From Malacoraja senta (lineage: Eukaryota): a stretch of 64,000 nt of DNA. The DNA lies in the NCBI GenBank assembly GCA_038087875.1, contig CM075983.1:13454001-13518000 (forward strand), in the 5' to 3' direction. The notes below the pieces were generated by a model, which ran no database searches, was not told the DNA's origin, and worked only from the letters and a program-made list of their open reading frames with translations. Below are positions 2,437 through 61,400 of the stretch, one piece after another. Each line of letters opens with the position of its first letter. Position 1 is the stretch's first letter. The position numbers and the translations under genes were made by a program.

Positions 2437-3555
2437 TACAGCATGAAAACAGGCCTTTAGCCCAACTCAACCAAGATGTCTATCTGAGCTAGTCCCAAAT
2501 GTCTGCATTTGGCCCATATCCCTCTAAAACGTTTCTATCCATGTACCTGTCCAAATATCTCTTAAACATTTATCATTGTATCTGTCTCTATGCCTTCCTC
2601 TGGCGGCTGGTTCCATATATCCACCAGCCTCTTGTGTGAGCAAGTTGCCCCCTCAGATCTCTTTTAAATCTTTCCCCTCTCAATTAAATCTATGGCCTTA
2701 TTGAGTGTTATTATTATTGGAAGTGGTTTATTATTGTCACATGTACCGAGATACAGTGATACAGATTCAGTATAGTCATCATACCTGATTATAATCAAAA
2801 TGATACATGAGTACAACAGGTAGTGTCAAAAGAGAAAGGAAAGGAGTGCAGACTATAGTGTTACAGCTACAGAGGGAGTGATCCTCTACCCTGGGAATAA
2901 AAAACTATGACCACCCACCTTACTAACATCCATGTATACCACATCCACCCAACTACCTTCATCAATCTTCTTTGTCATCGCCACAAAAAAACTCAATCAA
3001 GCTAGTGAGACACAACCTGTCATGTGCAAAGCCGTGCTGGCTATCCCTAATTGGTGCATTCTCTTCCAAATGGGAGTAAATCCTATCTTGAAGAATTCTC
3101 TCCAATAGTTTCCCCACCACTGACGAGAGGATCACTGGCCTATAGTTCCCTGGATTTTCTCTACTTCCTTTCTTAAACAAAGAAACAACATTGGCCGCTC
3201 TCCAGTGCTCACGGACCTCGCCTGTGGCTAGACAAGAAACAAAGATCCTCATCAAGGCCCCTGAAAACTCCTTTCTTGCCTCCCTCAAGAATCTGGGATA
3301 GATCCTATCAGGTCCTGGGGACTTATCCACCTTAATGTTCTTCAAGAGACTCAGCACCACCTCCTTCTCAATCTCAAACTGCCCTTCATTATTTATTCTC
3401 CACACTTATCTTGCTCTCCTCCACATCCTCTCCTTGGTGAATACAAATGCAAAATACTCGTTCAGTACCTCACCTGCAACCTCCGACTCAAACCATAGAT
3501 TCCCTCCTTTATCTTTGAGTGGCCCTACCTTCTCCCTGGTCACCCTCTTATTTTA
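2437..3555 (-). mobile_element. CR1-type LINE fragments (3' end plus RT N-terminal region)
   Basis: ORF 2962..3405 (KSPGPDRIYPR, WRAANVVSLFKKGSRENPGNYRPV, SQHGF) is a typical CR1 ORF2 segment; a CR1 3' end lies at about 2437-2700. Confidence 0.85.
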
Positions 3556-13328: not shown

Positions 13329-13625
13329 ATAAGGTCATGTCATGTGATGGGAGCGGAATTAGGCCATTCGGCCCATCAATTCTACTCCGCCATTTAATCG
13401 TGGCTGATCTATCTCTCCCTCCTCACCCCATTCTCCTGCCTTCTCCCCATAACCCATCACAGCCGTACTAATCAAGAATCTATCTATCTCTGCCTTAAAA
13501 ATATCCATTGGCCTCCACAGCCATCTGTGGCAAAGAATTCCACAAGAGTCATCACCTTCTGGCTAAAGAAATTCCTCCTCACATCCTTCCTAAAGGAACG
13601 TCCTTTAATTCTGAGGCTATGACTG
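13329..13625 (-). mobile_element. CR1 LINE 3' fragment
   Basis: Reverse complement of the CR1 3' end (aggccattcggcccatc...gaattccacaa). Confidence 0.75.
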
Positions 13626-13843
13626 GTCCTAGACTCTCCCAGCCTTCGATGGTGGGGAGGTCAGTACCTGTGATGGATCAGGCAGTGTCTACCACTCTCT
13701 GTAGCCTCCTCCATTCCTGGGCGTTTGAGTTACCAAACCAGGCCACGATGCAACCAGTCAGTTTGCTCTCTCCCGTACACATGCTCATATACTGTTATAT
13801 AAGGCTGACTCGGTGTCTTATGGCTGCATGTTTTTATTTACAG

Positions 13844-14042
13844 ATCTACTTCTATGGGGGCAACATGACGTTTATAAATCCAGCCTTCAAAGGCAGATTA
13901 TTGGCAGGACATAAACCAGGAAATGCATCAATTACCATTGAAAAGTTGCGACCTACCGACTCTGGGAATTATATCTGTGAAGTTGAGAATCCACCGGACT
14001 TCACAGGCAATAACATCGGATCAGCAACACTCACAGTTTTAG
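13844..14042 (+). CDS. VSIG1: VSIG1-like exon 3 (IgV domain C-half)
   Basis: Acceptor tttttatttacAG|, IYFYGG...FKGRL...GNASITIEKLRPTDSGNYICEVENPPDFTG...LTVL (DxGxYxC motif; NPPDF as in VSIG1), donor G|GTAGTG (phase 1). Confidence 0.95.
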
Positions 14043-14249
14043 GTAGTGTATCACTTACCTCCACTGCTATAAACCTTTTTCTCCCCATGTGTAATTTTGT
14101 GTACTTCACGCTGATTTGGAACACATTTCACAGGGTTCATCCAACATTTGAACCCTTGCACAGAGCTCGAGTGTAACGTGTATATAAGTCACTCTATCAA
14201 AAAACAATACTCAACTCTAATCTCAGAATACCCAGTATCCACCCGAAAT

Positions 14250-17487: not shown

Positions 17488-18350
17488 CTTGAGAATGCAG
17501 GGTGACTTGGAAAGATTGGATGAGTGGGCAGATGCATGGCAGATGCAGTTTAATGTGGATAAATGTGAGGTTATCCACTTTGGTAGCAAAAACAGGAAGG
17601 CAGATTATTATCTAAATGGTGTCAAATTGGGAAAAGGGGAAGTATAACGGGATCTGGGGGGTCCTTGTTCATCAGTCTATGAAAGTAAGCATGCAGGTAC
17701 AGCAGGCAGTGAAGAAAGCGAATGGCATGTTGGCCTTCATAACAAGAGGAGTTGAGTATAGGAGCAAAGAGGTCCTTCTGCAGTTGTACAGGGCCCCAGT
17801 GAGACCACACCTGGAGTATTGTGTGCAGTTTTGGTCCCCTAATTTGAGGAAGAACATTCATGCTATTGAGGGAGTGCAGCATAGGTTCATGAGGTTAATT
17901 CCTGGGATGGCGGGACTGTCATATGCTGAGAGAATGGAACGGCTGGGCTTGTATACTCTGGAATTTAGAAGGATGAGAGGGGATCTTATTGAAACATATA
18001 AGATTATTAAGGGTTTGGACACGCTAGAGGCAGAAAACATGTTCCCAATGTTGGGGGAGTCCAGAACCAGGGGTCAAAGTTTAAGAATAAATGGCAAGCC
18101 ATTTAGAATGGAGATGAGGAAACACTTTTTCACAGAGAGTTGTGAGGCTGTGGAATTCTCTGCCTCAGATGGAGGCCGGTTCTCTAGATACTTTAAGAGA
18201 GAGCTAGATAGGGCTCTTAAAGATAGCTGAGTCAGGGGATATGGGGAGAAGGCAGGAACGGGGTACTGATTGGGGATGATCAGTCATGATCACATTGAAT
18301 GGCGGTGCTGGCTCGAAGGGCCGAATGGCCTATCCTGCACCTATTGTGTA
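17488..18350 (+). mobile_element. CR1 LINE 3' portion (RT C-terminus plus 3' UTR)
   Basis: ORF 17616..18230: VRPHLEYCVQFWSP, RRMRGDLIETYKI. Confidence 0.9.
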
Positions 18351-19584: not shown

Positions 19585-19918
19585 NNNNNNNNNNNNNNNN
19601 NNNNNNNNNNNNNNNNNNNNNNNNNNNNNNNNNNNNNNNNNNNNNNNNNNNNNNNNNNNNNNNNNNNNNNNNNNNNNNNNNNNNNNNNNNNNNNNNNNNN
19701 NNNNNNNNNNNNNNNNNNNNNNNNNNNNNNNNNNNNNNNNNNNNNNNNNNNNNNNNNNNNNNNNNNNNNNNNNNNNNNNNNNNNNNNNNNNNNNNNNNNN
19801 NNNNNNNNNNNNNNNNNNNNNNNNNNNNNNNNNNNNNNNNNNNNNNNNNNNNNNNNNNNNNNNNNNNNNNNNNNNNNNNNNNNNNNNNNNNNNNNNNNNN
19901 NNNNNNNNNNNNNNNNNN
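19585..19918. other. Assembly gap (334 N) in VSIG1 intron 4
   Basis: N run flanked by TA/CA microsatellite-like sequence. Exons 4 and 5 join in frame into a complete C2 domain, so no coding exon needs to be hidden here. Confidence 0.99.
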
Positions 19919-24299: not shown

Positions 24300-27200
24300 T
24301 TAGCCAGCAGGGTCAGAATCAGAAGCTATCATTTTATACCAAAAAAAAGAGATTATGAAGGGTCTCTAAGTAAAACATCAAAATAATTTATATTGCAAGC
24401 GCAATATTATGAGTGAATCTGTACACATAATAGAATTTCCTTTCATATGAATTGCCAATTGCATCCCAGCCAAAGCCATTCTCGTTATTATCATGGTTTA
24501 AAACTGCTTCAAGATATATTTTACTTGAGTGCAAAGCAATGAATAATTTGTTGTCTTAAATTTCCCACCTCATTGATGAAAATACATAATTTTGGCACAG
24601 TAGACTTGATGGGCCGAATGGCCTAATTATGCTCCTAGAACTTATGAATCGTTTTGCATTTGACAAGTTTATTGGGTCAAGGATGAGGATGCCTCGCTGG
24701 ATCTTGGGATTCTTCAACTAAGGACGGGGAAAATAATCCTTCTTTCAGTCGCTACCCAGAGATCAGTCCTTGTACTGGAATCTTGAACAATAAACAAACT
24801 GTTGGAAGAACTCAATAGGTTAGGCAGCATCTGTAAAAGGAAATTCATCAGTTTGATGAAGGGTCAGGACACAAAACCTTATCTGTCCATTTCTTTCCAC
24901 AAATGCTGCCTGAACTGTTAAATTCCTCCAGCAGTTTGCTTGTTGATCAATACTTTTACATTGAGAAATACAAGGAGCTGCAGATGTTGGTTTACAATAA
25001 AAGACAAAAAGTGCTGGAGTAACTCGCTGGGTCAGGCAACGTCTCCGGAGAACATGGATAGATGACATTTTGGGTCGGGTGTGAAGTAGATTTAAATATA
25101 TCTGTAAGCAGCTTTACACATGATAACAAGTATGGTTTTGAGCCTAGACACATGCAATTGACATTTTAAATGAAGGCAATTTGATTATTTGCACAGCTAC
25201 ATTGGTTGAGATTATGGACTAAATGCTGGGCAATGGGATTATAATGGAATCCCATTATAGCATGGATGTGTTGGGCTGAATGGACTCTTGCCATGCTGTA
25301 GGATTTTATGATTCCATGATTCTATGAACAAGATCAGTGTTGGTCCTAAAGCCCTGAAGATCGGTAGGAAATTGACATTCACGAATACATAACAAAACAC
25401 TGCTAATGTTGCAAAACTGAAATAAAAATGCTGGAAATGTTCAGTAGATTTGTCTGCCTATGTGGAGAGAGAAACAGAGTTAACTATTGAAAGATTATCA
25501 TCCTAAAATGTTAAATGTGTTTCTCTGTAGTTGCTGCTTCACCCATTGAGTATACCCAGCATTTTCTATTTTTAATTCAGATTTCCAACAGGTGCAGTAT
25601 TTTGTTGTTGGATTAACATTTTAGATCAAAGGCCTTTCAACAAGATGAAAGTTCACTGAATGGTTAACTTTGTTTCTTTCCATAGATGATGCTTGGCATT
25701 CGGATTATTTGCAGCATGTTCTGCTTTTAAGCTGACATTTACCTACACAAGATATATATAGAGGAAGGGTGGTCACTTTGGGGTAAAATTGTAGAACCGC
25801 CATCGATCACAGAACAGTTCCTCAGCAAATGTCTTGTGGAAATAGTTTTTAAAAATACAAACATCGTTTTTTTCCGGCATGAAGCTCCGTTGAGCTATTC
25901 ATTCTTTATCAAGATCCTTATCTTCAGCGCAGACAAATAATTTACGTCTCATCGGTCTGGTTTGGACCCAAGTCCCAAGGATTCAATGGGAATGTCCTTA
26001 ATGGTCATTATTGTGACTTTGTAAATGTCACTGTTTAACCAATGCGTGATTGCTAAATAGTTTCTTTTGTTTTATGTTTGTATGAAGTAAATACCATTGA
26101 AAAATTGGTTGTTGAACAACCCGTGGTTTAGGGAGCAGACGTTATGTAGTTATGCACACTCACCCAGCCACGTTTTTTACATCATTATTAATTAATGGCA
26201 GCAATGAGCTGGAGTTTCAAGATATGTGCCCCGTGTCCCCATTGGAAATACAGAAACTACCCACTATTCTCTTAACAGAAATCCTGCTTATATAACAGCA
26301 GGAAGTTGCTCCTAATATGGATTTAATTCACTTTTCAGATAACGAATCTCTTTTGAAAATAAATTAGAAGGAATGAGCAAAGTATGTAAAAAGGGAAAGA
26401 TACAGAGATTGCTTTAGAATAGATCTTTAGAATTACCAAGTGTCAATGGCTCGATTGTAATCATATATGGTCTTTCTAATCTGGATAGCACACAACAAAA
26501 GCTTTTCACTGTACCTTAGGGTCTGGAATCAAAATTTGGAGGGTGGAGCTGAGAGCGATCCACATTTCATTTTTAACTGATTAGTTTTCAATTTACATTC
26601 ATCTACCTGCAGCAAGTTCCAAGTGCCAGATGTAAAAGATATTTTAACGTTTTGCAATTGCCTGCCGCTGCATGAATGTCTCATGTAGCTGACAGAAGCC
26701 ATGTGTCCAGGCAGGTGTGGCACCTTAATGGGCATTAAGTTCATAAATTATAGGAGCAGAATTAGGCCATTCGGCCCATCAGGACTATTCTGCCATTCAA
26801 TCATGGCTGATCTATCTTTCCTTCTCAACCCCATTCTCCTGCTTTCTCCCCATAGTCCCTGACACACCTACTAATCAAGAATCTATCAAGCTTTGCCTTA
26901 AGACTATCCATTGATGTGGCCTGTATAGCCTTCTGTGACAATGAATTCCACAGATTTGTCACAGATTATTTTGCAGGTCAGGTTCATTATGTCAGAGATA
27001 CTTGAGCTGGAAACAGATTTACATTCTTCAAGATCAATGCAGAAATATCGGATTGCATTTCACATTTGCTTTCTTGATTAAGTTCTATTCCAAAGTGCAC
27101 ATAAACATTTTGTAATAAGTGATAGAAAATCTAAGCCTGAAAAAAAAGGCTAAATGTACCTTCTAAATGTCTTCAATATTTTAAGTTTCACCATTTAATA

Positions 27201-28614
27201 TCGCTGCAACTATTTGGTCTTCTCTTTTCTTTAAGAAGATTAATAATTTCTTTTTTGTACACGCTTATTTTTTCTACCCATCTCTTCTTATATCTTTGCA
27301 ATACAGTTAATTGGTGTAAAAGATAATGACACCTGAAATATTAGATGTTGACTGATGATTGTCAGAATTTCCAATTTCTAAATAAGCAGGTGGCTTTCTT
27401 AATATGTTTTCTAATGAATTGCCTTTGTATGGATTTGCCTGTCAAAAGTTAAGCATTTGTTTTAAAATCATGTATATTTGATTAAATCATTGCTTCTATT
27501 GCCACTAAGACCGTAAAGAGTTAATCAACTGTGTATTTTTACAATTCTGTAAAAAAAAAAGTCTGAAGTCAATAATGTCTGCACAAAAATAGGATTGCAT
27601 TAATATAAACTTCTTAAATAAAACTTTTGGTGTCATTCTACTTTCATCTCTAACATGAGGGCAAATCAATACCAGAATTTATGCTGGCCAATAACTAGCA
27701 CCGTCTTCTATGAGGATGATGCGATGCAATGATGGATTTTCTTTGGAACGTAATGTTCCTTGGTTATTCTGGAGGAGAATATTATCTGTCGTTAAGCAGC
27801 AAGTCATAGCTGGGTAGTGAAATGTGCTTATGATGGATTGACTTGGGGGATAACCTTTGTGGATCAATGAGTAATAAAGTTTCACAAAGCCCTCTGAAAT
27901 AATGTAACGTGCGTTAACATTGCCGAAACATACAAGTTCATAAGTTATAGGTGCAGAATTAGGCCATTCGGCCCATAGAGTCTGGGGGAGGCTAAGGACG
28001 GAAAGGTCAGTATGGGAATGGGAAGGGGAGTTAGTGTTTGGCAACCGGGAGATCACTAGGCCAAAGCAGACCAAGCAAGGGTGTTCAGCGAAAAGATCTC
28101 CCAGTCAGCGCGTGGTCTCGCAGATATATAGGACTCCACACTATTATATCCCTCTTTCACATGGTAACACACAGTTCAATCATGTTGAGTTAATCTACAA
28201 TTAAAACAGCCTGCAAAGCATCCAGTTTATTCAATCTTACAGAGCCCAACTCACCTACTGAAACACTACTATGAGATATGATTTATTATTTATTTATTTA
28301 TCCTCCTTGTCTTAGTCTCCCTCTTCATTATTTTGCACGCAAGTTCTGATAACATTGTTGGTCTTGAAACCTCGGACAGTGAAACTCCAGAGGTTGACTC
28401 GTACAGCCACTGGGCGCTGCAGCAGATCTTTTCATGTTGTTTTGCGATGTCACGCGACGTGCATCACATCAATTGCGATGTCATGCACTGGTCATCCCAT
28501 GCATTATGTTGTCATCTGATCCCACCTGAATCATGTTATGTCCAATGAAACCCATCTGTTAATATGTTACTGCAGCCCTTCACTCAAAGACTAATTTCAT
28601 AAGAATGGAACAAT

Positions 28615-29436
28615 ATGAGAATCTTAACTAAATTATTCCTACACTCCAAGGCGTACTCAAATGCAATCAGCAGTCCAGGGAAATTCCAATGCTTGCAATA
28701 CTTGAAGACACTGAGGAATTTTCAGAATGATGGATTTTACACGGTTTACTTGGGTAAAACGCATATTTCTGAGAACCTGATAACAGGCGATGTGAACTCC
28801 AGCGTGGTCAAAACCAAATCACCTCTTGAAGAACTGACATTAATCCACGCTGGGGGAGTAAGAGGCTGGGTCCCGTGGCAATACAGAGTCTTCTTCCAGT
28901 CACAGCAACTATGGACGTCTCCAAAGCCTGTAGATGCTAATGAGCGGATCTTTGAAGAATTCTGTCAGGTGCTCAGGGAAACCTACGGAAAATGCACAGT
29001 GGTGATGAGATCCAAATATTGGGTTCCTGCAACTAAGTCACAGGTTCAAAGTTCCTCTGAAGACCAGTCAGTGATCCCTCTGTGGAACCCAGAGGCCAAG
29101 CTCAATTCCCCTTCGCAATCTCCAGACATCCAAATGACAAAGGTTTTTTGTCCCAGGATTGCGAGACACCATGGCCACGAGTTCTTGTACCTTCCTCCCC
29201 CTTATCCTCATCTCAGTCCTTTAGAATCAGCATGGTCTTCGGTTAAATGGGCTTTAATCAACAATAGGAAACATTTCACTGTTGCGGCCTTTCCAAAAAT
29301 AGATGACTACAAGCGCATCCACTTGAAGGCTTTGATTGAAAACGCGATTGAGGGAGTAACGCCTTCCAAATGGGAAACGTCCTTTAACCGAGTCAAGAAG
29401 TGGGAGAATCGCTATCTCTACAACCAAGCGCAGTAA
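28615..29436 (+). CDS. C21orf140: C21orf140/FAM243-like protein, 273 aa, single coding exon; transposase-derived fold
   Basis: Uninterrupted ORF in unique sequence with blocks matching recalled human C21orf140 (QCLQYLKTLR, DGF.TVY.G.T.I.E.L.TG, GWVPW.YRVF, EFC.V.R..YGKC, GHE.L.LP.P...L.PL.SAWSS.KW..INNR, SKW...WEN.YL). Confidence 0.85.
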   Translation: MRILTKLFLHSKAYSNAISSPGKFQCLQYLKTLRNFQNDGFYTVYLGKTHISENLITGDVNSSVVKTKSPLEELTLIHAGGVRGWVPWQYRVFFQSQQLWTSPKPVDANERIFEEFCQVLRETYGKCTVVMRSKYWVPATKSQVQSSSEDQSVIPLWNPEAKLNSPSQSPDIQMTKVFCPRIARHHGHEFLYLPPPYPHLSPLESAWSSVKWALINNRKHFTVAAFPKIDDYKRIHLKALIENAIEGVTPSKWETSFNRVKKWENRYLYNQAQ

Positions 29437-29460
29437 GGGGCCTCTCCTCTGATAATTGCA

Positions 29461-29466
29461 AATAAA
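29461..29466 (+). promoter_or_regulatory. Candidate polyadenylation signal of the C21orf140-like gene
   Basis: AATAAA beginning 25 nt after the last base of the stop codon. Confidence 0.5.
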
Positions 29467-30016
29467 ATATCAATGCCACATTTTTGAGGTATCATTTTTA
29501 AACTTCAGAAAAGATTTTAGGAAAGGCAATTTTCGATGTTTCCAATTCAGAGGTGTTATTGCAAGGTGATCTTATTTAGGGGATGGAATCCATGTCATGA
29601 TTCTAGTTTGGAAGTTTGCTATGGGAACGGAGCTGAGATCTATGGGATTGGAGTTCCAGAGTCCCGGCTGCAGGGAGCAAATTCAACATGCTGATCGGCG
29701 TGGAAAACCCCATCAGATTAGGTTTGGCTGCCTCACCTAACCTAGGCACCACATTTTCGGGGGGAGACTACGGTGAGGGGTATTTTAAATATGCTCTCAG
29801 TATAAAGCAGGTGCCGCACCATTGGTTGTCAGAATATTGGTGGTGAACCTGTATTTAACTGAAGGATTTACTTTTTGTTGAAAGCACACAACATCTTTAT
29901 AACTTATTAATTTACTACTTTTTTCTTAATCCTAGCCATTCTCTATTTGGTTCTCAAAATACCTTCAATCCTTCTTTAAAACCTAACATTACTTTCAATG
30001 CTTGACCACACAACTG

Positions 30017-30342
30017 TTTGAGCTGCTACCTCACAGCACCAGAGGCTCAAGTTCGACCCTCACCTTGGGTGCTGTCTGTGTGGAGTTTGCACGTTCTTCC
30101 TGTGATCGCGTGGGCTTCCTTTGGGTAGCTGCGGTTTCCTCCCGTATGCCAAAGACCTGTATGTCTTTAGGTTAATTGGCCTCTGTAAAAATCGCCTCTA
30201 ATGTACAGGAGGTGGAAGCGAACGTGGGATAACATAGAACTAGTGTCAACGGGTGATCAATGTTCGGAGTGGACTCAGCGGGCAGAAGGGCCTGTTTCCA
30301 TGCTGTATCTCTAACATTAAAATTAAAACTAAAACTAAATTG
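30017..30342 (+). mobile_element. HE1-like SINE (diverged)
   Basis: Head aagttcgaccc, body and 3' gaagggcctgtttccatgctgtatctc. Confidence 0.75.
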
Positions 30343-31719
30343 GCACACAATGTTTATCTTGGATCATGTCTAAATTTCCAACATTTTTTTTTCAGTCACC
30401 ATCCCCTTCTTTTCTACTTTCATCCAGTCTGCAAATTTGAGACAATATGCAATCTCTGGATTAAATAGTAACAGACTCAAGGCTCACATCATAGTGTCTT
30501 GTTTACAATCTAAACTGACGTCTTTTGTTATTCCTTCAGACTAAAAATGTAACCAAATTTCTTGAATTGAGTTTCAGTGCTGGAGACATATGAAGGTTAG
30601 AAAGAGATTTTTTAAATGCTTTGTTGTGATCCATAATATAGACGATATATCTGTTTCTCCCAATGAGTAGGTACTTGTTTCTTGATCAGAAAATGTTCAC
30701 TTTGGAACAACAATAGCAGTTTGATCAATTATTGAATTCACAGTTAAAAAATTGAATTCCAAAGTGAAATTAGTTTCATTACCAGAACTCTTATTCCACA
30801 GATGTGATGGTATAGGTCATACTGTCCTCCCTACGTGATTGTTTAACAGTAGAACGTAGATTGACAGCCAGCCAAACTCGATTCAATAATCAGACGCGAG
30901 TCTGGAAGTTAGCATCTCTGCTCTTAAGTTTAATGATTTTCCAGTGCTGTCATTCTTAATATTGAAAAACGACTGAAACTAAATAAAGGAGAAGAAAGAT
31001 ACATAAATTACTCTCCTTTGCAGAAATATACATTTAAATAGAAATTAAACATATAGGGCGAATATATAATAATATACAATCCTATTAACAATCAAAGCAC
31101 TTAAGAGTTCATAAGTAGAATTGGGTCATTCAGCTCAAAGTCTACTCCGCCATTCAATCATGGTCTACCTATCTTTCCTTCTCAACCCCATTCTCTTACC
31201 TGCTCCCCATAACCTTTGACACCCTTTCCAATCAATAACTTGTCAATCTCCGCTTTAAAAGTTCCCATTGACTTAGCCCACAGCCTTCTGTGGCAATGAA
31301 TTCCACAGATTCACCTACCTCTGACTAAAGAAATTCCTCCTTATCTCCTTTCTAAAGGTACGTCCATTTATTCGGAGGCTGTGCCCTCTGGTTGGTGTCT
31401 GGAGTGGGATACTATTACTATTCACATGCTATTTTAATCTTATGTGTCTCAAAAATATGGGGGACACATGTTGAATATGCTATTATCTTTCTTGCAAACA
31501 ATTTAAGACTACCAAAATTAATCATTTAAATGTTTATTCACTTCTATCACTGTTTCATTGCTTCTTGGTTAAATCCTGATGCGCACTTTGCCACCTTTTC
31601 AATGGTAATTCTAGACCAAAAAAACAGAAGTTAAATTGTCGCCCAGACACTTCTCCCTCCTCAGAGACACTGATGATCTGAACAGAAAAGGCATCAACAT
31701 TAAGAATATAACTATCAAT

Positions 31720-37255: not shown

Positions 37256-38770
37256 GACATTGCGGAAAACTAGATTGGAAACTGCGGGAGCCCTGGTTGA
37301 AATTTACGAGTCGTCCTCAAATACAGGAGAGGTGCCGGAAGACTGGAGGGTGGCAAATGTGCCTTTTTTCAAGAAGGACTGCAGGGAAAATGCTGGGAAC
37401 TATAAGCTGGTGAGCTTAACATCTGTAGTTGGTAAGTTACTGGAGAGTATTCTGAGGGATAGGTTATACAGGCATTTGAATGGGCAAGGGCTGATTAGGG
37501 ATAGTCAGCATGGTTTTGTACGTGGGAGGTCGTGTCTCACAAATCTGATTGATTTTTTTGAAGACGTGACCAAAAAGGTTGATAAGTGCAGAGCTGTAGA
37601 TGTTGTGTACATGGACTTCAGTAAGGCGTTCGACAAGATTCCGCATTATAGGCTGCACTAGAAGGCTAGATCGCATGGGATCCAAGGAGAGATAGCTGAA
37701 TGGATAGCGAATTGGCTCCATGGAAGGAAGCAGAGGGTGATGGTGGAAGGTTGCTTCTCGGACTGGAGGCCTGTGACTAGTGGTGTGCATCAGGGTTTGG
37801 TGCTGGGCCCATTACTGTTTGTCATCTACGTCAATGATTTGGATGAGAACATACAGGGTAAGATTAGCAAGTTTGCTGGTGATACCAAAGTTAGTGGTTT
37901 TGCAGATAGTGAAGATGGTTGTGAACGATTGCAGCAGGATCTGGATCGATTGGCCAGGTGGTCGGAGGAATGGTTGATGGAATTCAATACACAAAAGTGT
38001 GAGGTGTTGCATTTTGGGACGTTGAACAAGGGCAGGACCTACACAGTGAATGGTAGGCCTCTGGGTAGTGTTGTAGAGCAGAGCGATCTAGGAGTACAGG
38101 TGCATGGTTCCTTGGAGGTTGAGTCGCAGGTAGATAAGGTGGTCAAAAAGACTTTTGGCACTTTGGCCTTCATCAGTCAGAGTATTGAGTATAGAAGTTG
38201 GGAGCCAATTGTTGCAGTTGTATAAGAGGTTGCTGAGACCGCATTTCGAATATTGTGTTCAGTTCTGGGCACCGTGTTAAGGGAAAGATATTGTCAAGCT
38301 TGAACGGGTTCAGAAAAGATTTACAAGGATGTTGCCAGGACTAGAGGGTGTGAGCTATAGGGAGAATTTGAGTAGGCTGGGTCTCTATTCCATGGAGCGC
38401 AGGAAGATGACAGATGATCTTATAGAGGTATGCAAAATCATGAGGAATAGATCCAGTAGATGCACAGAGTCTTTTACCCAGAGTAGGGGAATCGAGGACC
38501 AGAGGACATAGGTTCAAGGTGAAAGGGAAAAGATTTAATAGGAATCCGAGGGGTAACTTTTTCACACAAAGGGTGGTGGGTGTATGGAACAAGCTGCCAG
38601 AGGAGGTAGTTGAGGCTGGGACTATCCCATCATTTAGGAAACAGTTAGACAGGTACTTGGATAGGACAGGTTTGGAGGGATATGGACCAAGCGCAGGCAA
38701 GTGGGACTAGTGTGGGCGAGTTGGGCCAAAGGGCCTGTTTCCACACTGTATCACTCTATGACTCTATGAC
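37256..38770 (+). mobile_element. CR1 LINE, 1.5-kb 3' portion with decayed RT
   Basis: ORFs 37260..37661 and 37737..38225 (DFSKAFDKIPH, GVHQGLVLGPLLF, KFAGDT), with stops and frameshifts; (CTATGA)n tail. Confidence 0.92.
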
Positions 38771-43107: not shown

Positions 43108-44090
43108 AAATTCAAATCAATTCAATTCAATCTTTAATTGTCATTGTGCAGTGTACAGTACAGAGACAACGAAATGCAGTTAGCATCTCACCCAGAAAAG
43201 CGAACTTAGGAATAATGAGCAGTAAAATATATATATGTACAGTAGTGCAATTTTTCTGGGGGAAATAGTGTCCGGGGGAGGGGTGACTGGCAATCACCGA
43301 GGTGCAGATTTCAGTAGTGTAACAACCGCAGGGAAGCAGCTGTTCCTGAACCTGCTGGTTCAGCAACGGAGAGACCTGTAGCGCCTCCCGGATGGGAGGA
43401 GGGTAAACAGTCTGTGGTTGGGGTGAGAGCAGTCCTTGACGATGCTGCGCGTCCTTCGCAGACATCGCTTGCTTTGGACAGACTCAATGAAGGGGAGTGA
43501 GGAACCGGTGATGCGTTGGGCGGTTTTCATCACCCTCTGCAGTGCTTTCCGGTCAGAGACAGAGCAGTTGCCATACCATACTGTGATACAGTTGGTAAGG
43601 ATGCTCTCGATGGTGCAGCGGTAGAAGTTCACCAGAATCTGAGGAGACAGATGGACCTTCTTTAGTCTCCCCAGGAAGAAGAGAAGCTGGTGAGCCTTCT
43701 TGACCAGTGTTGATGTATTGTGGGTCCAAGAGAGGTCATCAGAGATGTTGACCCCCAGAAACCTGAAGCTGGAAACACGTTCCACCTCCGTCCCGTTAAT
43801 ATGGATGGGAGTGTGCGTGCAGCCCCTAGACCTCCTGTAGTCCACAATGAGCTCCTTGGTCATCTTGGAGTTAAGGGCCAGGTTGTTGTCAGTGCACCAT
43901 GCTGCTAGGAGCTGAACCTCCTCCCTATAGGCCAACTCATCGTTGTCGCTGATGAGGCCAATCACCGTTGTATCATCTGCATACTTGATGATGGTGTTAG
44001 AACCATGTACAGGTGTGCAGTCGGTGAAGGTGAAGAGGGAGTAGAGGAGGGGGCTCAGTACACAGGCCGTTGCTACTTCCAAGACCATTA
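43108..44090 (-). mobile_element. Rex/Babar-type LINE, 5'-truncated RT fragment
   Basis: ORF 43360..44088: CVLSPLLYSLF, KYADDTTVIGLI, FYRCTIESILT, LPSGRRYRSLRC; (ATTGA)n tail. Confidence 0.88.
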
Positions 44091-46381: not shown

Positions 46382-49350
46382 TCAGTTCACTCGTTGTCGT
46401 GGCTATCCCTCGAGGTCGAGGATGATGGTCTACGTTCTGTTGATTTTACGTTCTGTTGTTTTTATGGACTCTCAGGTGGCTTATGAGTCCAATCCTGGCT
46501 TTAAAAGTTCTTTGACATTCAGGACAGGTAATTCCAGATGGCAGATCGGGCTTTGGTTGTTGCTGCCTCTCTTTATGTTTTCTTCTCTTTTGTTCTAATT
46601 CTGCGCATCTCTTGGCTTCGAAGGTCGCTGTTCCTTCTTGGATGATGGTTCGCCAGAGTTTCCTGTCTTTGGCATTGGTTTCCCAATTGTCAATGTCGAT
46701 TGCACATTTCTTCATGCTGGCTTTTAAGGTGTCTTTGAATCTCTTCTTTTGTCCGCCTCTTTTCCGTTTGCCTTCTTTAAGCTGGGAGTATAAGGTTTGC
46801 TTTGGTAGACAAAGTGTTTAAGAAGGAACTGCAGATGCTGGAAATTCCCAGGTACACAAAAATGCTGGAGAAACTCAGCGGGTGCAGCAGCATAACGTTC
46901 AAGTCAAGTCAAGTCACATTTATTTATATAGCACATTTAAAAAACAACTCCCGTTGGCCAAAGTGCTTTACATTTGTTATAAGAATAGCATAAACTAAAC
47001 AAACTACATACATATATACATGTAGCCCTCACTCAGAGGACGTCAGGAAAGGCTTGGGAGTATAGATAAGTTTTTAGTCTTGACTTAAAAGAGTCGATGG
47101 AGGGGGCAGTTCTGATGGGAAGGGGGATGCTGTTCCACAGTCTAGGAGCTGCAACCGCAAAGGCGCGGTCGCCCCTGAGCTTATGCCTAGACCGTGGGAT
47201 ATTCAGCAACCCCAAGTCGGCCGATCTGAGGGGCCTGGAGGTGGAGTGGTGGGTGAGAAGACTTTTTATGTAGGTGGGGGCAAGCCCATTGAGGGCTTTG
47301 TAGACATGGAGGAGGATCTTGAAGTTGCGTTGCCTATTTCCTTCGCTCCATAGATGCTGCTGCATCCGCTGAGTTTCTCCAGCATTTTTGTGTACCTTTG
47401 CTTTGGTAGACGCTCGTCTTCCATCCGAACATGACCGACCCATCTTAGTTGGTTCTTGATGACGAAGGCTTCGATGCTAGATGTGTTTGCTTCATTCAGC
47501 ACGCTGACGTTGGTTCTTCTGTCTTCCCAACTGATATTTAAGCTGCTTCGAAGACATCGTTGATGGAACTTTTCAAGTGTTTTCAGATGGCGTTGGTATG
47601 GTGTCCAGGTTTCTGATGCATACAGGAGCGTTGGAATCACCACTGCCTTGTACACTAACATTTTGGTGTCTGTTCGGATGTGACGATTTTGAAAGACTCT
47701 CGTTCGAAGATGTCCAAAAGCTGTTCCAGCACACTTAAGACGATGTTGGATCTCGTCATCAAGGTCGACATTGGAGGAGAGGTGACTTCCAAGGTACGGA
47801 AAGTGATCCACATTTTCCAGGGTTGTTTCACCAAGTTGGATTGACGGTTCTTTCCAATTTGTCTCAGTTGGTGACGATTGGTAGATAACCTGAGTCTTCT
47901 TGGAGTTGATGGTAAGTCCAAGTTTCGTGTATGCACTGTTGAAGGCAGTCAGGATCTGTTGCAGATGATTTTTTGAGAGAGCTGCAACACAGTTGTCGTC
48001 TGCGTATTGGAACTCCATGAGGGAGCTCATAGATGTCTTAGTTTAGGACTTGAGACGGGCAAGATTGAAAAGTCTGCCATCTGTTCTGTAAATGATTTCG
48101 ATTCCTGGGGGTAGGTGGATAGGATGTCTCATAAGAGTTCCCTTGATACCGAGTCGAAGGCCTTAGTGAGGTCGATGAATGCCATGTACCAAAGGTTGAG
48201 GTTGTTCACAACATTTTTCTTGTAGTTGACGCATTGTGAATATCATGTCGGCTGTTCCACGTGATGGTCTAAAACCAGCTTGTGTCTCTGGAAGGATCTT
48301 CTCGGCTAAAGGCTTGAGTCGGTTGTTCATGATGTGGGCGAGGACTTTGCCTGCTGTTGCTAACAGGGAAATTCCACGATAGTTTCCTCAGTCAGATCGA
48401 TCGCCTTTCCTTTTGTAGATGGTAACGATTGCTGAGTCTCTAAAGTCTCCTGGTACGTCTTCATTTATCCAGATCTTGATGAGAAGTTGATGCAATTGGT
48501 AATGGAGCAGGTTACCTCCAAGATTGTAGACCTCGGCTGGTATTCCATCGAGTACAGCTGCCTTGTTGTATTTGAAGGTTTTGATGGCTTCCTTGACTTC
48601 TTCAAGTGATTGTATTCTGCTTAGGAAGTCGTCAACAGGCTGCTTTGGAATCTTGTTGATCACGTTCCTGACAAATGAGGCGGTTTGATTTAGAAGATCT
48701 TCAAAATGCTCCCTCCATCTAGAATTGATGTCAGCATTGCTCTTCAGGATGGTTGATCCATCTTTGTTTTTGGGAGGGGCTTGACCGTGAGTGGATGGAC
48801 CAAAAATGGCTTTGGTGGCGTTGAAAAAGCCTTGAGTGTTGTTGGCGTCTGCTTGTTGTTGGAGCTTTTTCCCTCCACCATTGGCTTTTCAGGATTCGGG
48901 TGCTCTGCTGGACTGCAGCCTTGCATTCCTGATAGCACTTCCTTTTTGTAGCTGACTGTTGGTCATTTTGTAAGGTGATGAAAGCTTTTCGCTTTTCATC
49001 GATGAGTTGTTGGAATTGTTTGTCATTATTGTCGAACCAATCCTGATGATTTTTTGACGAACCCAATTGTTTCCTTGCAGGAGGCGATGATAGCGTTCTT
49101 CAATAGATTCCAGTGTTCTTCGACAGACTGTGGAATATGTTGAGGCAGTTGTTCTGGAAGTTTCTGTTGAAACTTCTGAACATGGTTGATGTCTTGAAGT
49201 ATGTCAACATTGAATATCTTGGTGTTCTGGTTTTGATGTTTCCTTTTTGGGCCGAATCTTGTTTTCAGTACATCTTGTTGGTCACGGGATCGTACGATGA
49301 TGTAGTCGATGAGGTGCCAGTGTTTGGAACGTGGATGCTGCCAGGAGACA
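46382..49350 (-). mobile_element. RTE (BovB-like) LINE, about 2.4 kb excluding a nested insert, frameshifted and internally deleted
   Basis: APE C-terminus (HPRSKHWHLIDYIIVR), RT (FQYADD, FPYLGS, VYKAVVIPTLLYASETW) and C-terminal C2H2 (CPECQRTFKARIGLISHLRVH). The segment between the DLTKAFD motif and the GIEIIYRTDG motif is missing. Confidence 0.9.
46811..47396. mobile_element. Composite insert: inverted PLE arms enclosing an L2 3' fragment (46900..47325)
   Basis: 15-bp TSD TTTGCTTTGGTAGAC at 46796-46810 and 47397-47411. L2 frame FKILLHVYKALNGLAP...RAFAVAAPRLWNSIP with (ACTTG)n tail. Confidence 0.85.
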
Positions 49351-59899: not shown

Positions 59900-61400
59900 T
59901 AGTCTAACATCGGTAGTGGGGAACTGCTAGAGTCAGTTATTAAAGATGGGATAGCAGCACATTTGGAAAGTGGTGAAATCATTGGACAAAGTCAGCATGG
60001 ATTGAAGAAAGGTAAATCATGTCTGACGAATCTTATAGAATTTTTCGAGGATGTAACTAGTAGAGTGGATAAGGGAGAACCAGTGGATGTGTTATATCTG
60101 GACTTTCAGAAGGCTTTCGACAAGGTCCCACATAAGAGATTAGTATACAAACTTAAAGCACACGGTATTGGGGGTTCAGTATTGATGTGGATAGAGAACT
60201 GGCTGGCAGACAGGAAGCAAAGAGTAGGAGTAAACGGGTCCTTTTCAGAATGGCAGGCAGTGACTAGTGGGGTACCGCAAGGCTCAGTGCAGGGACCCCA
60301 GCTATTTACAATATATATTAATGATTTGGACGAGGGAATTGAATGCAACATCTCCAAGTTTGCGGATGACACTAAGCTGGGGGGCAGTGTTAGCTGTGAG
60401 GAGGATGCTAGGAGGCTGCAAGGTGACTTGGATAGGCTGGGTGAGTGGGCAAATGCATGGCATATGCAGTATAATGTGGATAAATGTGAGGTTATCCACT
60501 TTGGTGGCAAAAACAGGAAAGTAGACTATTATCAGAATGGTGGCCGATTAGGAAAAGGGGAGATGCAACGAGACCTGGGTGTCATGGTACACCAGTCATT
60601 GAAAGTAGGCAGGTACACAAAAATGCTGGAGAAACTCAGCGGGTGCAGCAGCATCTATGGAGCGAATGAGATAGGCAAGGTTTCAGGCCGAAACCCTTCT
60701 TCAGAAAGTAGGCATGCAGGTGCAGCAGGCAGTGAAGAAAGCGAATGGTATGTTAGCATTCATAGCAAAAGGATTTGAGTATAGGAGCAGGGAGGTTCTA
60801 CTGCAGTTGTACAGGGTCTTGGTGAGACCACACCTGGAGTATTGCGTACAGTTTTGGTCTCCAAATCTGAGGAAAGACATTCTTGCCATAGAGGGAGTAC
60901 AGAGAAGGTTCACCAGACTGATTCCTGGGATGTCAGGACTTTCATATGAAGAAAGACTGGATAGACTCGGCTTGTATTCGCTGGAATTTAGAAGATTGAG
61001 GGGGGATCTTATAGAAACGTACAAAATTCTTAAGGGGTTGGACAGGCTAGATGCAGGAAGATTGTTCTCGATGTTGGGGAAGTCCAGAACAAGGGGGTCA
61101 CAGTTTAAGGATAAGGGGGAAATCTTTTAGGACCGAGATGAGAAAAACATTTTTCACACAGAGAGTGGTGAATCTCTGGAATTCTCTGCCACAAAAGGTA
61201 GTTGAGGCCAGTTCATTGGCTATATTTAAGAAGGAGTTAGATGTGGCCCTTGTGGCTAAAGGGATCAGGGGGTATGGAGAGAAGGCAGGTACAGGATACT
61301 GAGTTGGATGATCAGCCATGATCATATTGAATGGCGGTGCAGGCTCGAAGGGCCGAATGGCCTACTCCTGCACCTGTTTTCTATGTTTCTATGTTCCTAT
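59900..61400 (+). mobile_element. Young CR1 LINE (1.5 kb) with a long open RT frame, split by a PLE insert
   Basis: ORFs 59963..60778 and 60714..61130 (DFQKAFDKVPH, GVPQGSVQGP, KFADD). Removing 60612-60714 restores HQSLKVGMQVQQAVKK. Confidence 0.93.
60612..60703 (-). mobile_element. 92-bp PLE terminal unit (hammerhead-like core to 3' end) with TSD
   Basis: 11-bp TSD GAAAGTAGGCA at 60601-60611 and 60704-60714. Confidence 0.9.

What the first reader, a model, noticed from the sequence alone, without database searches (positions are those of the whole stretch)
28615..29436. C21orf140-like gene is a catalytically disarmed, domesticated IS630/Tc1/mariner transposase
Seen in sequence: an intact 273-aa single-exon ORF with a polyA signal and no flanking TIRs. 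Its motifs track the DDE_3 transposase core in order: VYLGKT (for VYLDET), LIHAGGVRGWV (for VLHAG...GFV), VVMRS (for IVMDN), GHEFLYLPPPYPHLSPLESAWSSVK (for GHEVLRLPPY..LNPIE..W..VK). Two of the three catalytic acids are replaced (G47 and R132); only E204 remains, and there is no room for an N-terminal HTH DNA-binding domain. Established: C21orf140/FAM243A is an uncharacterised human gene, as far as I recall. Inference: this is an ancient exapted RNase H-fold pseudo-enzyme under purifying selection, possibly a nucleic-acid-binding factor or a dominant-negative or decoy regulator of Tc1-type transposons.
Basis: partly seen in the sequence, partly recalled or inferred. Interest (0 to 1): 0.8.

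Follow-up and report, generated by a model that had tools for sequence, protein, structure and literature searches.

The report
Disarmed Sailor-type transposase turned host gene
This skate gene, the counterpart of the uncharacterised human gene C21orf140/FAM243A, is the leftover cutting domain of an ancient "Sailor"-type jumping gene that lost its DNA-recognition part and its catalytic residues but has been kept by selection in jawed vertebrates.

Summary
Window 28615-29436 (+) is an intact 273-aa single-exon ORF with G47, R132 and E204 at the three DDE positions.

- **Homology.** It is the orthologue of vertebrate C21orf140/FAM243 (Pfam PF27940). It is homologous over its whole length to DDE transposase catalytic domains (hhalign 99.7%, E 1e-26). 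The predicted fold matches SETMAR, Mos1 and Sleeping Beauty cores (Z 12-13).
- **Refinement.** Every transposase relative found in an exhaustive search has a D-D spacing to E of 82-91 residues and the motifs of the Sailor (DD82E) superfamily. One relative is a complete 2.3-kb element with 31-nt TIRs and TATA flanks. Sailor was reported absent from vertebrates.
- **Loss of parts.** No sampled orthologue from shark to deer keeps the full triad. The HTH region, TIRs and other genomic copies are absent.
- **Selection.** The core is under purifying selection (omega 0.31, p 2e-19). The remnant of the D-E insert evolves neutrally (omega 1.1).
- **Second copy.** An identical copy 58.5 kb upstream lies in a duplication that ends at an assembly gap, so it is probably an artefact.

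The DDE link is not new: a 2024 paper lists C21ORF140 as a putative DDE endonuclease, and Pfam has a C21orf140-like family. The Sailor origin, the loss of the triad across jawed vertebrates and the selection pattern appeared in none of the papers my searches found. Function and expression remain untested.

The parts
28615..29436 (+). Single-exon CDS of the skate C21orf140/FAM243 orthologue (273 aa). It corresponds to the whole DDE catalytic domain of a Sailor-like transposase plus the preceding linker helices.
28753..28755 (+). Codon 47 (ggt, Gly) at the position of the first catalytic Asp (motif VYLGKT against VYLDET in the transposases).
29008..29010 (+). Codon 132 (aga, Arg) at the position of the second catalytic Asp (VVMRS against IMDNA).
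29224..29226 (+). Codon 204 (gaa, Glu), the retained third triad residue (LSPLES against LNPIE).
29020..29139 (+). Residues 136-175: a degenerate, predicted-disordered remnant of the long D-to-E insert typical of Sailor transposases. It varies in length between species and evolves neutrally (omega 1.1).
29461..29466 (+). AATAAA polyadenylation-signal consensus 25 nt after the stop codon.
   Evidence: sequence only; no RNA evidence
28172..28614 (+). Upstream non-coding block that still aligns with the sawfish orthologous locus (78.5% over 28172-29606). It is a candidate promoter or 5'UTR.
   Evidence: conservation only
29437..29606 (+). Downstream block conserved with sawfish, numbfish and sevengill shark. 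It is a candidate 3'UTR.

Best explanation
The ORF is the skate orthologue of C21orf140/FAM243. This host gene arose once, before the split of cartilaginous and bony vertebrates, by capture of the catalytic (RNase H-like, DDE) domain of a Sailor-type (DD82E) IS630-Tc1-mariner transposase.

Shown here:
- The capture kept the linker helices, the five-strand core and the C-terminal helices.
- It lost the N-terminal paired HTH DNA-binding region and the transposon ends.
- The carboxylate triad is broken in every lineage sampled (G/R/E in this skate).
- The long helical insert between the second D and E has decayed into a disordered, neutrally evolving linker.
- The strands and helices that lined the former active site stay under purifying selection.

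Inferred, not shown:
- The protein cannot perform metal-dependent DNA cleavage or strand transfer.
- It works as a small, basic (pI about 9) non-catalytic binding module. The old active-site cleft would hold a nucleic-acid or protein ligand.
- The conserved Arg/Lys at the second-Asp position would sit where the metal ion used to be and could contact a phosphate directly.
For: **Homology**
- Exhaustive phmmer finds 425-570-aa proteins that pass the Pfam DDE_3 threshold and align to residues 27-271.
- A FAM243 profile against a transposase profile gives hhalign probability 99.7%, E 1.2e-26 over 216 columns.
- The query alone gives DDE_3 at E 2.6e-5.
- A mixed profile hits the Sleeping Beauty catalytic domain at E 3.3e-7.

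**Fold**
- The AF2 model has pTM 0.75 with RNase H-like strand order.
- All top PDB hits are SETMAR, Mos1 and Sleeping Beauty catalytic domains: Foldseek E 5e-5 and Z 12.3-13.4 over 178-198 residues. Retroviral integrases follow at Z about 9.
- In Swiss-Prot models, human, mouse and cow C21orf140 match at TM 0.69-0.71, followed by SETMAR, Tc1, Mos1 and Tc3.

**Sailor origin**
- All relatives with both residues intact have D-E spacers of 82-91 residues and the motifs VYLDET / IMDNA / LNPIE. These match the published Sailor definition (PMC8533490).
- The relative in locus L020 is a 2343-bp element with 31-nt TIRs and TATA at both ends.

**Loss of triad and HTH:**

**Behaves as a host gene**
- The only matches in the 1.94-Gb genome are this locus and one near-identical duplicate.
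- Flanks are colinear with the Rhinoraja and Pristis loci, and the same Ig-domain neighbour lies upstream.
- FAM243 forms one clade at 100/100 support with a species-like topology.

**Selection**
- omega is 0.40 overall, 0.31 in the core (2dlnL 80.9, p 2e-19) and 1.10 in the loop (p 0.7).
- Pairwise dN/dS is 0.15-0.43.

**Charge:** pI is 8.6-9.5 in 11 orthologues.
Against: - No expression evidence could be obtained. The runs that hold the locus look like genome assemblies, and no RNA run was listed.
- The query alone stays below the Pfam DDE_3 gathering score (24.5 against 28.6 bits).
- The D-E-equivalent spacing (72 here, 54-74 in the family) is below the published Sailor range of 78-111, so a partial deletion has to be assumed.
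- The attachment point of FAM243 inside the transposase tree is unresolved, and no classical Tc1/mariner outgroup was included.
- Catalytic inactivity and ligand binding are inferences from residues, not assays.
- The homodimer prediction gave no verdict.
Confidence: 0.75

Rival explanations
1. It is a plain transposon fossil: a decaying Tc1/mariner-like copy whose ORF is open by chance and evolves neutrally.
For: It has sequence and fold similarity to transposases. The window is full of other repeat fragments.
Against: - It is effectively single-copy in 1.94 Gb.
- It has no TIRs.
- The locus is orthologous and colinear in other rays.
- The ORF is intact from sharks to mammals.
- Core omega is 0.31, and neutrality is rejected at p 2e-19.
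Confidence: 0.02
2. It is still an active nuclease or recombinase that uses substitute acidic residues (for example E53, or E/D204 plus others) in place of the classical triad.
For: - E53 is invariant and E/D204 is kept in most lineages.
- The strands that line the active site are highly conserved.
- PMC11377751 lists the human protein as a putative nuclease.
Against: - No orthologue keeps more than two of the three positions.
- The third position is N, T or Y in several teleosts.
- The second position is usually a basic residue, which is incompatible with metal binding.
- There is no DNA-recognition domain.
Confidence: 0.07
3. It is a dominant-negative or decoy regulator that poisons cognate transposases by heterodimerising with them.
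For: Truncated transposases can inhibit transposition in other systems (general knowledge, not tested here). Catalytic domains of this family can dimerise.
Against: - The genome contains no Sailor-like transposase to regulate. The Sailor survey found none in vertebrates.
- It is hard to see how such a role would keep a gene under selection for several hundred million years (age from general knowledge) without its target.
- The self-association prediction gave no support (no verdict).
Confidence: 0.06

Closest known systems
Human C21orf140 / FAM243A (UniProt B9A014; Pfam PF27940 'C21orf140-like')
   Same: It is the orthologue: 37% identity and TM 0.70 over residues 16-268. Length and single-exon layout are the same. 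All chondrichthyan orthologues carry PF27940.
   Different: The skate protein is about 20 residues longer in the variable loop. It keeps Glu rather than Asp at the third triad position (the mammal checked directly was fallow deer). Its chromosomal neighbour is an Ig-domain (VSIG1-like) gene.
Sailor (DD82E) transposases of the IS630-Tc1-mariner group (PMC8533490)
   Same: They are the nearest sequence relatives. The motifs around all three triad positions are shared, as are the long D-E spacing and the C-terminal helices.
   Different: FAM243 has no HTH domain, no TIRs or TATA duplication, a broken triad, and a spacer shortened to 54-74 residues. It is single-copy, vertically inherited and found in vertebrates, where Sailor elements were reported absent.
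SETMAR (Metnase) transposase domain and other domesticated ITm transposases (JRK, POGK, CENP-B-type)
   Same: It is a host gene built from an ITm transposase catalytic domain. SETMAR is the best structural match, at Z 13.4.
   Different: Those proteins keep a DNA-binding domain and are usually fused to other domains (general knowledge, not tested here). FAM243 is the bare catalytic core with two or more triad residues lost. Its source superfamily is also different (Sailor, not mariner or pogo).

Membership tests
C21orf140/FAM243 (Pfam PF27940) | Sequence membership and orthology to the vertebrate gene | tested here: met
   Named orthologues are 64-95% identical and all carry precomputed PF27940. 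The fold matches human, mouse and cow C21orf140 at TM 0.69-0.71 and 34-39% identity. FAM243 forms one clade at 100/100. PF27940 itself is not in the local Pfam copy, so it was not scored directly.
DDE_3 / IS630-Tc1-mariner transposase catalytic domain | Pfam DDE_3 (PF13358) gathering score | tested here: not met
   24.5 bits against a cut-off of 28.6, E 2.6e-5, covering only residues 185-221. Profile-profile homology to DDE_3-positive transposases is nevertheless 99.7%, E 1.2e-26.
DDE_3 / IS630-Tc1-mariner transposase catalytic domain | RNase H-like fold of Tc1/mariner catalytic domains | tested here: met
   Z is 12.3-13.4 with rmsd 3.3-4.3 A over 178-198 residues to SETMAR, Mos1 and Sleeping Beauty. 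Foldseek E is 5e-5 to 7e-4.
DDE_3 / IS630-Tc1-mariner transposase catalytic domain | Intact D-D-E/D catalytic triad | tested here: not met
   The triad is G47/R132/E204 in the skate. None of the orthologues examined is intact.
DDE_3 / IS630-Tc1-mariner transposase catalytic domain | N-terminal paired HTH DNA-binding domain | tested here: not met
   Only 46 residues precede the first triad position, against 171-267 in relatives. There is no remnant in the window.
DDE_3 / IS630-Tc1-mariner transposase catalytic domain | Terminal inverted repeats, target-site duplication and multiple copies | tested here: not met
   No TIRs. There are two near-identical loci only, and one is probably an assembly artefact.
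Sailor (DD82E) superfamily | Second D to E spacing of 78-111 residues | tested here: inconclusive
   The equivalent spacing is 72 in the skate and 54-74 in the family. That is below the Sailor range but far above the 34-41 of Tc1/mariner. All relatives with both residues intact have 82-91. The range is taken from PMC8533490.
Sailor (DD82E) superfamily | Signature motifs I/VVYLDET, VIIMDNA and HCELNPIEL | tested here: met
   The skate has TVYLGKT, TVVMRSK and YPHLSPLES in the same columns. The relatives have VYLDET, IMDNA and LNPIEL. The match is to the degenerate forms, with the catalytic residues replaced.
Sailor (DD82E) superfamily | Nearest autonomous relatives are Sailor elements (TATA duplication, TIRs) | tested here: met
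   L020 is 2343 bp with 31-nt TIRs at 2-32 and 2313-2343, TATA just outside both, and a 425-aa DD84E transposase. A rooted phylogeny with reference families was not done.
Domesticated (exapted) transposase gene | Single orthologous locus, vertical inheritance, purifying selection | tested here: met
Domesticated (exapted) transposase gene | Expression and a host function | not testable with these tools
   No RNA run was listed for this species. The runs that were laid are genome-like contigs.

The most novel reading that the evidence does not exclude
FAM243/C21orf140 is the only surviving vertebrate descendant of the Sailor (DD82E) transposon superfamily. It was captured once in the ancestor of jawed vertebrates. 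It has been kept ever since as a metal-free pseudo-nuclease whose former active site, with Arg/Lys in the metal position, binds a nucleic-acid phosphate or end.
Probability: 0.3. Interest if true: 0.6.

Novelty: new member of a known kind. Interest (0 to 1): 0.5.

Why it matters
C21orf140/FAM243A is a conserved human chromosome-21 gene with no known function. This work shows that it is a stripped, catalytically broken Sailor-type transposase core held under selection from sharks to mammals. That gives a concrete structural hypothesis: a non-catalytic RNase H-like binding module. It also points to clear experiments, namely nucleic-acid binding, mutation of the basic residue at the second-Asp position, and knock-outs.

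The result adds a new source superfamily, one thought absent from vertebrates, to the list of transposons that gave rise to vertebrate genes. The basic DDE link was already in a 2024 paper and in Pfam, so the advance is a refinement rather than a discovery.

Tried and rejected
- **Expression.** Two run searches and one read-laying run gave no RNA evidence. The holders are genome-like contigs that cover intergenic DNA evenly, so nothing can be said about expression.
- **Homodimer.** The prediction scored 0.00 and gave no verdict. It is not evidence either way.
- **PDB by sequence.** The single sequence against PDB sequences gave only chance-level hits, E 0.8-1.
- **TIRs around the metagenomic transposase P0026.** None were convincing on the 4.6-kb contig L007.
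- **Remnants of the transposase N-terminal domain in the window.** None were found.
- **KCNE-family neighbours.** I recall these as neighbours of the human gene. The Pfam ISK_Channel search found matches only on other contigs, C8 and C968.
- **Missing DNA.** No DNA could be fetched for Mobula, Mustelus, Chiloscyllium or Heterodontus because the files were too large. The codon analysis therefore rests on six sequences.

Full report
**1. The observation**

Window 28615-29436 (+) is an uninterrupted 273-codon ORF, ATG to TAA. The open frame extends only four codons upstream of the ATG. AATAAA lies at 29461-29466. Codons 47, 132 and 204 read ggt (G), aga (R) and gaa (E). Only short, imperfect inverted repeats of the kind expected by chance flank the ORF.

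**2. Identity of the gene**

A word-indexed search of 5.8 billion proteins returned eleven chondrichthyan proteins at 64-95% identity. The ten that carry a source name are called 'C21orf140 homolog' or 'FAM243-like'. A sturgeon protein matched at 39%. All twelve carry the precomputed Pfam family PF27940. A contig annotation and the ESM Atlas name that family 'C21orf140-like'.

Cluster look-ups added skink, herring, coelacanth, parrots, eel, sterlet, owl and fallow deer. The predicted structure matches the AlphaFold models of mouse, cow and human C21orf140 at TM 0.69-0.71 and 34-39% identity.

In a maximum-likelihood tree the 15 FAM243 sequences form one clade (100/100). Cartilaginous fishes separate from bony vertebrates, and ray-finned fishes group together within the latter. 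This is what vertical descent from one ancestral gene predicts.

**3. Homology to DDE transposases**

- The protein alone hits Pfam DDE_3 below threshold (24.5 against 28.6 bits, E 2.6e-5, residues 185-221).
- An exhaustive phmmer scan of 1.84 billion representatives found 42 proteins. They include 425-570-aa proteins that align to residues 27-271 of the query. The full-length ones tested pass the DDE_3 threshold, and one also has an HTH_33 hit.
- A FAM243-only profile against a transposase-only profile gives hhalign probability 99.7%, E 1.2e-26 over 216 columns. It runs from the linker before the first D to the C-terminal helices.
- A mixed profile hits the Sleeping Beauty catalytic domain in the PDB at E 3.3e-7.

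**4. Fold**

The AlphaFold2 model (52-sequence alignment, mean pLDDT 76, pTM 0.75) has the RNase H-like order: strand 42-52, strand 73-81, strand 91-94, helix 107-124, strand 127-132, a disordered stretch 136-174, helix 178-185, strand 189-193, helix 202-221 and C-terminal helices.

The 18 best Foldseek PDB matches are all SETMAR/Metnase, Mos1 or Sleeping Beauty catalytic domains (E 5e-5 to 6e-3). Retroviral integrases follow. Realignment gives Z 12.3-13.4 over 178-198 residues for those transposases, against about 9 for integrases.

**5. Which transposases**

[quoted passage not shown] The local motifs are VYLDET, IMDNA and LNPIE(L).

The paper that defined the Sailor superfamily gives exactly these features:
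- a DD78-111E signature, most often 82 or 83;
- consensus motifs I/VVYLDET, VIIMDNA and HCELNPIEL, against VLWSDES, IFQQDNA/D and SPDLNPIEN in Tc1/mariner;
- TATA target-site duplications.

It also reports Sailor as common in arthropods and absent from vertebrates (PMC8533490).

One relative (P0032, DD84E, 425 aa) sits on a 2343-bp contig. The ends of that contig are 31-nt inverted repeats (2-32 and 2313-2343), each preceded by TATA. It is therefore a complete Sailor-like element. Named relatives come from a mirid bug and a bee. The nearest non-chordate Atlas cluster is mainly arthropod and carries both DDE_3 and PF27940.

The equivalent spacing in FAM243 is 72 in this skate and 54-74 in the family. 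That is much too long for Tc1/mariner and fits a shortened Sailor insert. The source is therefore best described as Sailor-type. A rooted tree with reference families was not built, and the attachment point inside the transposases is unresolved.

**6. What was lost**

Triad positions by lineage:

| Lineage | First D | Second D | E |
|---|---|---|---|
| This skate | G | R | E |
| Catshark | G | K | E |
| Sterlet | G | K | D |
| Eel | G | N | T |
| Herring | G | D | N |
| Catfish | G | N | N |
| Coelacanth | D | R | D |
| Skink, budgerigar, quail | G | R | D |
| Fallow deer | G | K | D |

No orthologue examined has all three residues. Full-length relatives have 171-267 residues before the first D, and FAM243 has 34-51. 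Searching the window with the N-terminal parts of eleven transposases gave nothing (best E 0.087).

The region between the second position and E is predicted to be disordered. It varies in length and sequence between species.

**7. Host-gene behaviour**

- Searching the whole 1.94-Gb assembly with the skate protein, and with two Sailor-like transposases, returned only this locus and one other with an identical protein.
- The flanks are colinear with the orthologous loci of Rhinoraja (84-92% identity) and Pristis.
- An Ig/V-set gene lies upstream on the same strand in Rhinoraja and Mobula, as it does here.
- On six chondrichthyan coding sequences, pairwise dN/dS is 0.15-0.43.
- A codon model gives omega 0.40 overall (2dlnL 71.1 against omega = 1). 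The structured core (residues 26-135 and 176-270) gives 0.31 (2dlnL 80.9, p 2e-19). Residues 136-175 give 1.10 (p 0.7).

Selection thus acts on the fold, and especially on the strands around the former active site. These hold most of the invariant residues: HAG, GWVPW, YGKC, GH, P194, L200, P202, W207, K211.

**8. The second copy**

The other locus lies 58.5 kb upstream (C7:13424068). It sits in a block of at least 58 kb that is 96-99.8% identical, mostly above 98%, to the sequence that follows. The first copy ends at a 200-N gap (13442356-13442555). The matching sequence resumes within 1.5 kb after that gap; the 1.5 kb itself could not be compared because its counterpart lies outside the fetched region. 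This is the usual picture of two haplotype contig ends placed in tandem. I therefore treat the gene as single-copy. A very recent true duplication is not excluded.

**9. Mechanism (inference)**

Without carboxylates at two of three positions, two-metal catalysis is not expected. Without an HTH, there is no sequence-specific end recognition.

All orthologues are basic, with pI 8.6-9.5. The second-Asp position is Arg or Lys in cartilaginous fishes (Ser in manta ray), sturgeon, coelacanth, sauropsids and deer.

The most economical reading is a non-catalytic binding module that still uses the old cleft. The basic side chain would take the place of the metal. This has not been tested.

The decoy-regulator idea is weakened by the absence of any cognate transposase in the genome. 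The neutral-fossil reading is excluded by section 7.

**10. What was already known**

The literature library holds 15 papers that name the gene. Only one says anything about its nature. PMC11377751 lists C21ORF140 (FAM243A) among eight putative human nucleases as a 'DDE superfamily endonuclease', without further analysis. Pfam now has PF27940 'C21orf140-like', and automatic cluster names link it to DDE_3.

In none of the papers found did I see the Sailor origin, the loss of the triad across jawed vertebrates, the decay of the insert or the selection pattern. The Sailor paper mentions no domesticated derivative.

**11. Limits**

- There is no expression evidence.
- The homodimer prediction gave no verdict.
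- Only six sequences went into the codon analysis.
- No outgroup was used in the tree.

Noticed in passing
G000:C7:13384001-13442355 versus C7:13444028-13500913 (window 1-46913); gap at C7:13442356-13442555: A tandem block of at least 58 kb is repeated at mostly 98-99.8% identity. The first copy ends at a 200-N assembly gap. It duplicates this gene and the VSIG1-like neighbour. It is probably a false haplotype duplication rather than a real one.
   Followed up: partly
window 13508-14176 and upstream; L008:1-5731: An Ig/V-set (VSIG1-like) gene lies upstream on the same strand here, and also in Rhinoraja and Mobula. KCNE-family matches, which I recall as neighbours of the human gene, are on other contigs (C8:44830315-44839192 and C968). 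The neighbourhood therefore differs from the human chromosome-21 one.
   Followed up: partly
L012:2965-3786 (Heptranchias); P0008 (Heterodontus): The deposited gene models for two sharks omit about 17 residues of the variable loop, as if a 51-nt intron were present. In Heptranchias the genomic ORF is continuous and gives a 273-aa protein. The Heterodontus DNA could not be fetched, so that one was not checked.
   Followed up: partly
window 28756-28758 (codon 48): This skate has Lys at residue 48, whereas all eleven other chondrichthyan orthologues, including a 95%-identical skate, have Glu (VYLGET). Among the bony fishes examined, catfish also has Lys and sturgeon has Gly.
   Followed up: no
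L020:1-2343: This is a complete Sailor-like transposon assembled from a public run. It has 31-nt TIRs at 2-32 and 2313-2343, TATA outside both, and an intact 425-aa DD84E transposase at 518-1795.
   Followed up: yes
P0024 (Nesidiocoris tenuis), P0030, P0049: Some full-length invertebrate relatives with an N-terminal domain also lack triad residues. P0024 is G/S/E, P0030 is G/D/E and P0049 is Y/E/E. They are either decaying copies or independent co-options.
   Followed up: no
window 19585-19918: A run of N (an assembly gap or masked stretch) lies inside the duplicated block. It was left as it is.
   Followed up: no
window 2962-3405, 17616-18230, 37260-38225, 43360-44088, 47266-48030, 59963-61130: There are many reverse-transcriptase/LINE-like ORF fragments on both strands around the gene. 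In the laid runs, summed contig depth is extremely high at 26667-27000, 27836-28169, 30007-30340 and 31176-31500, which marks high-copy repeats.
   Followed up: no
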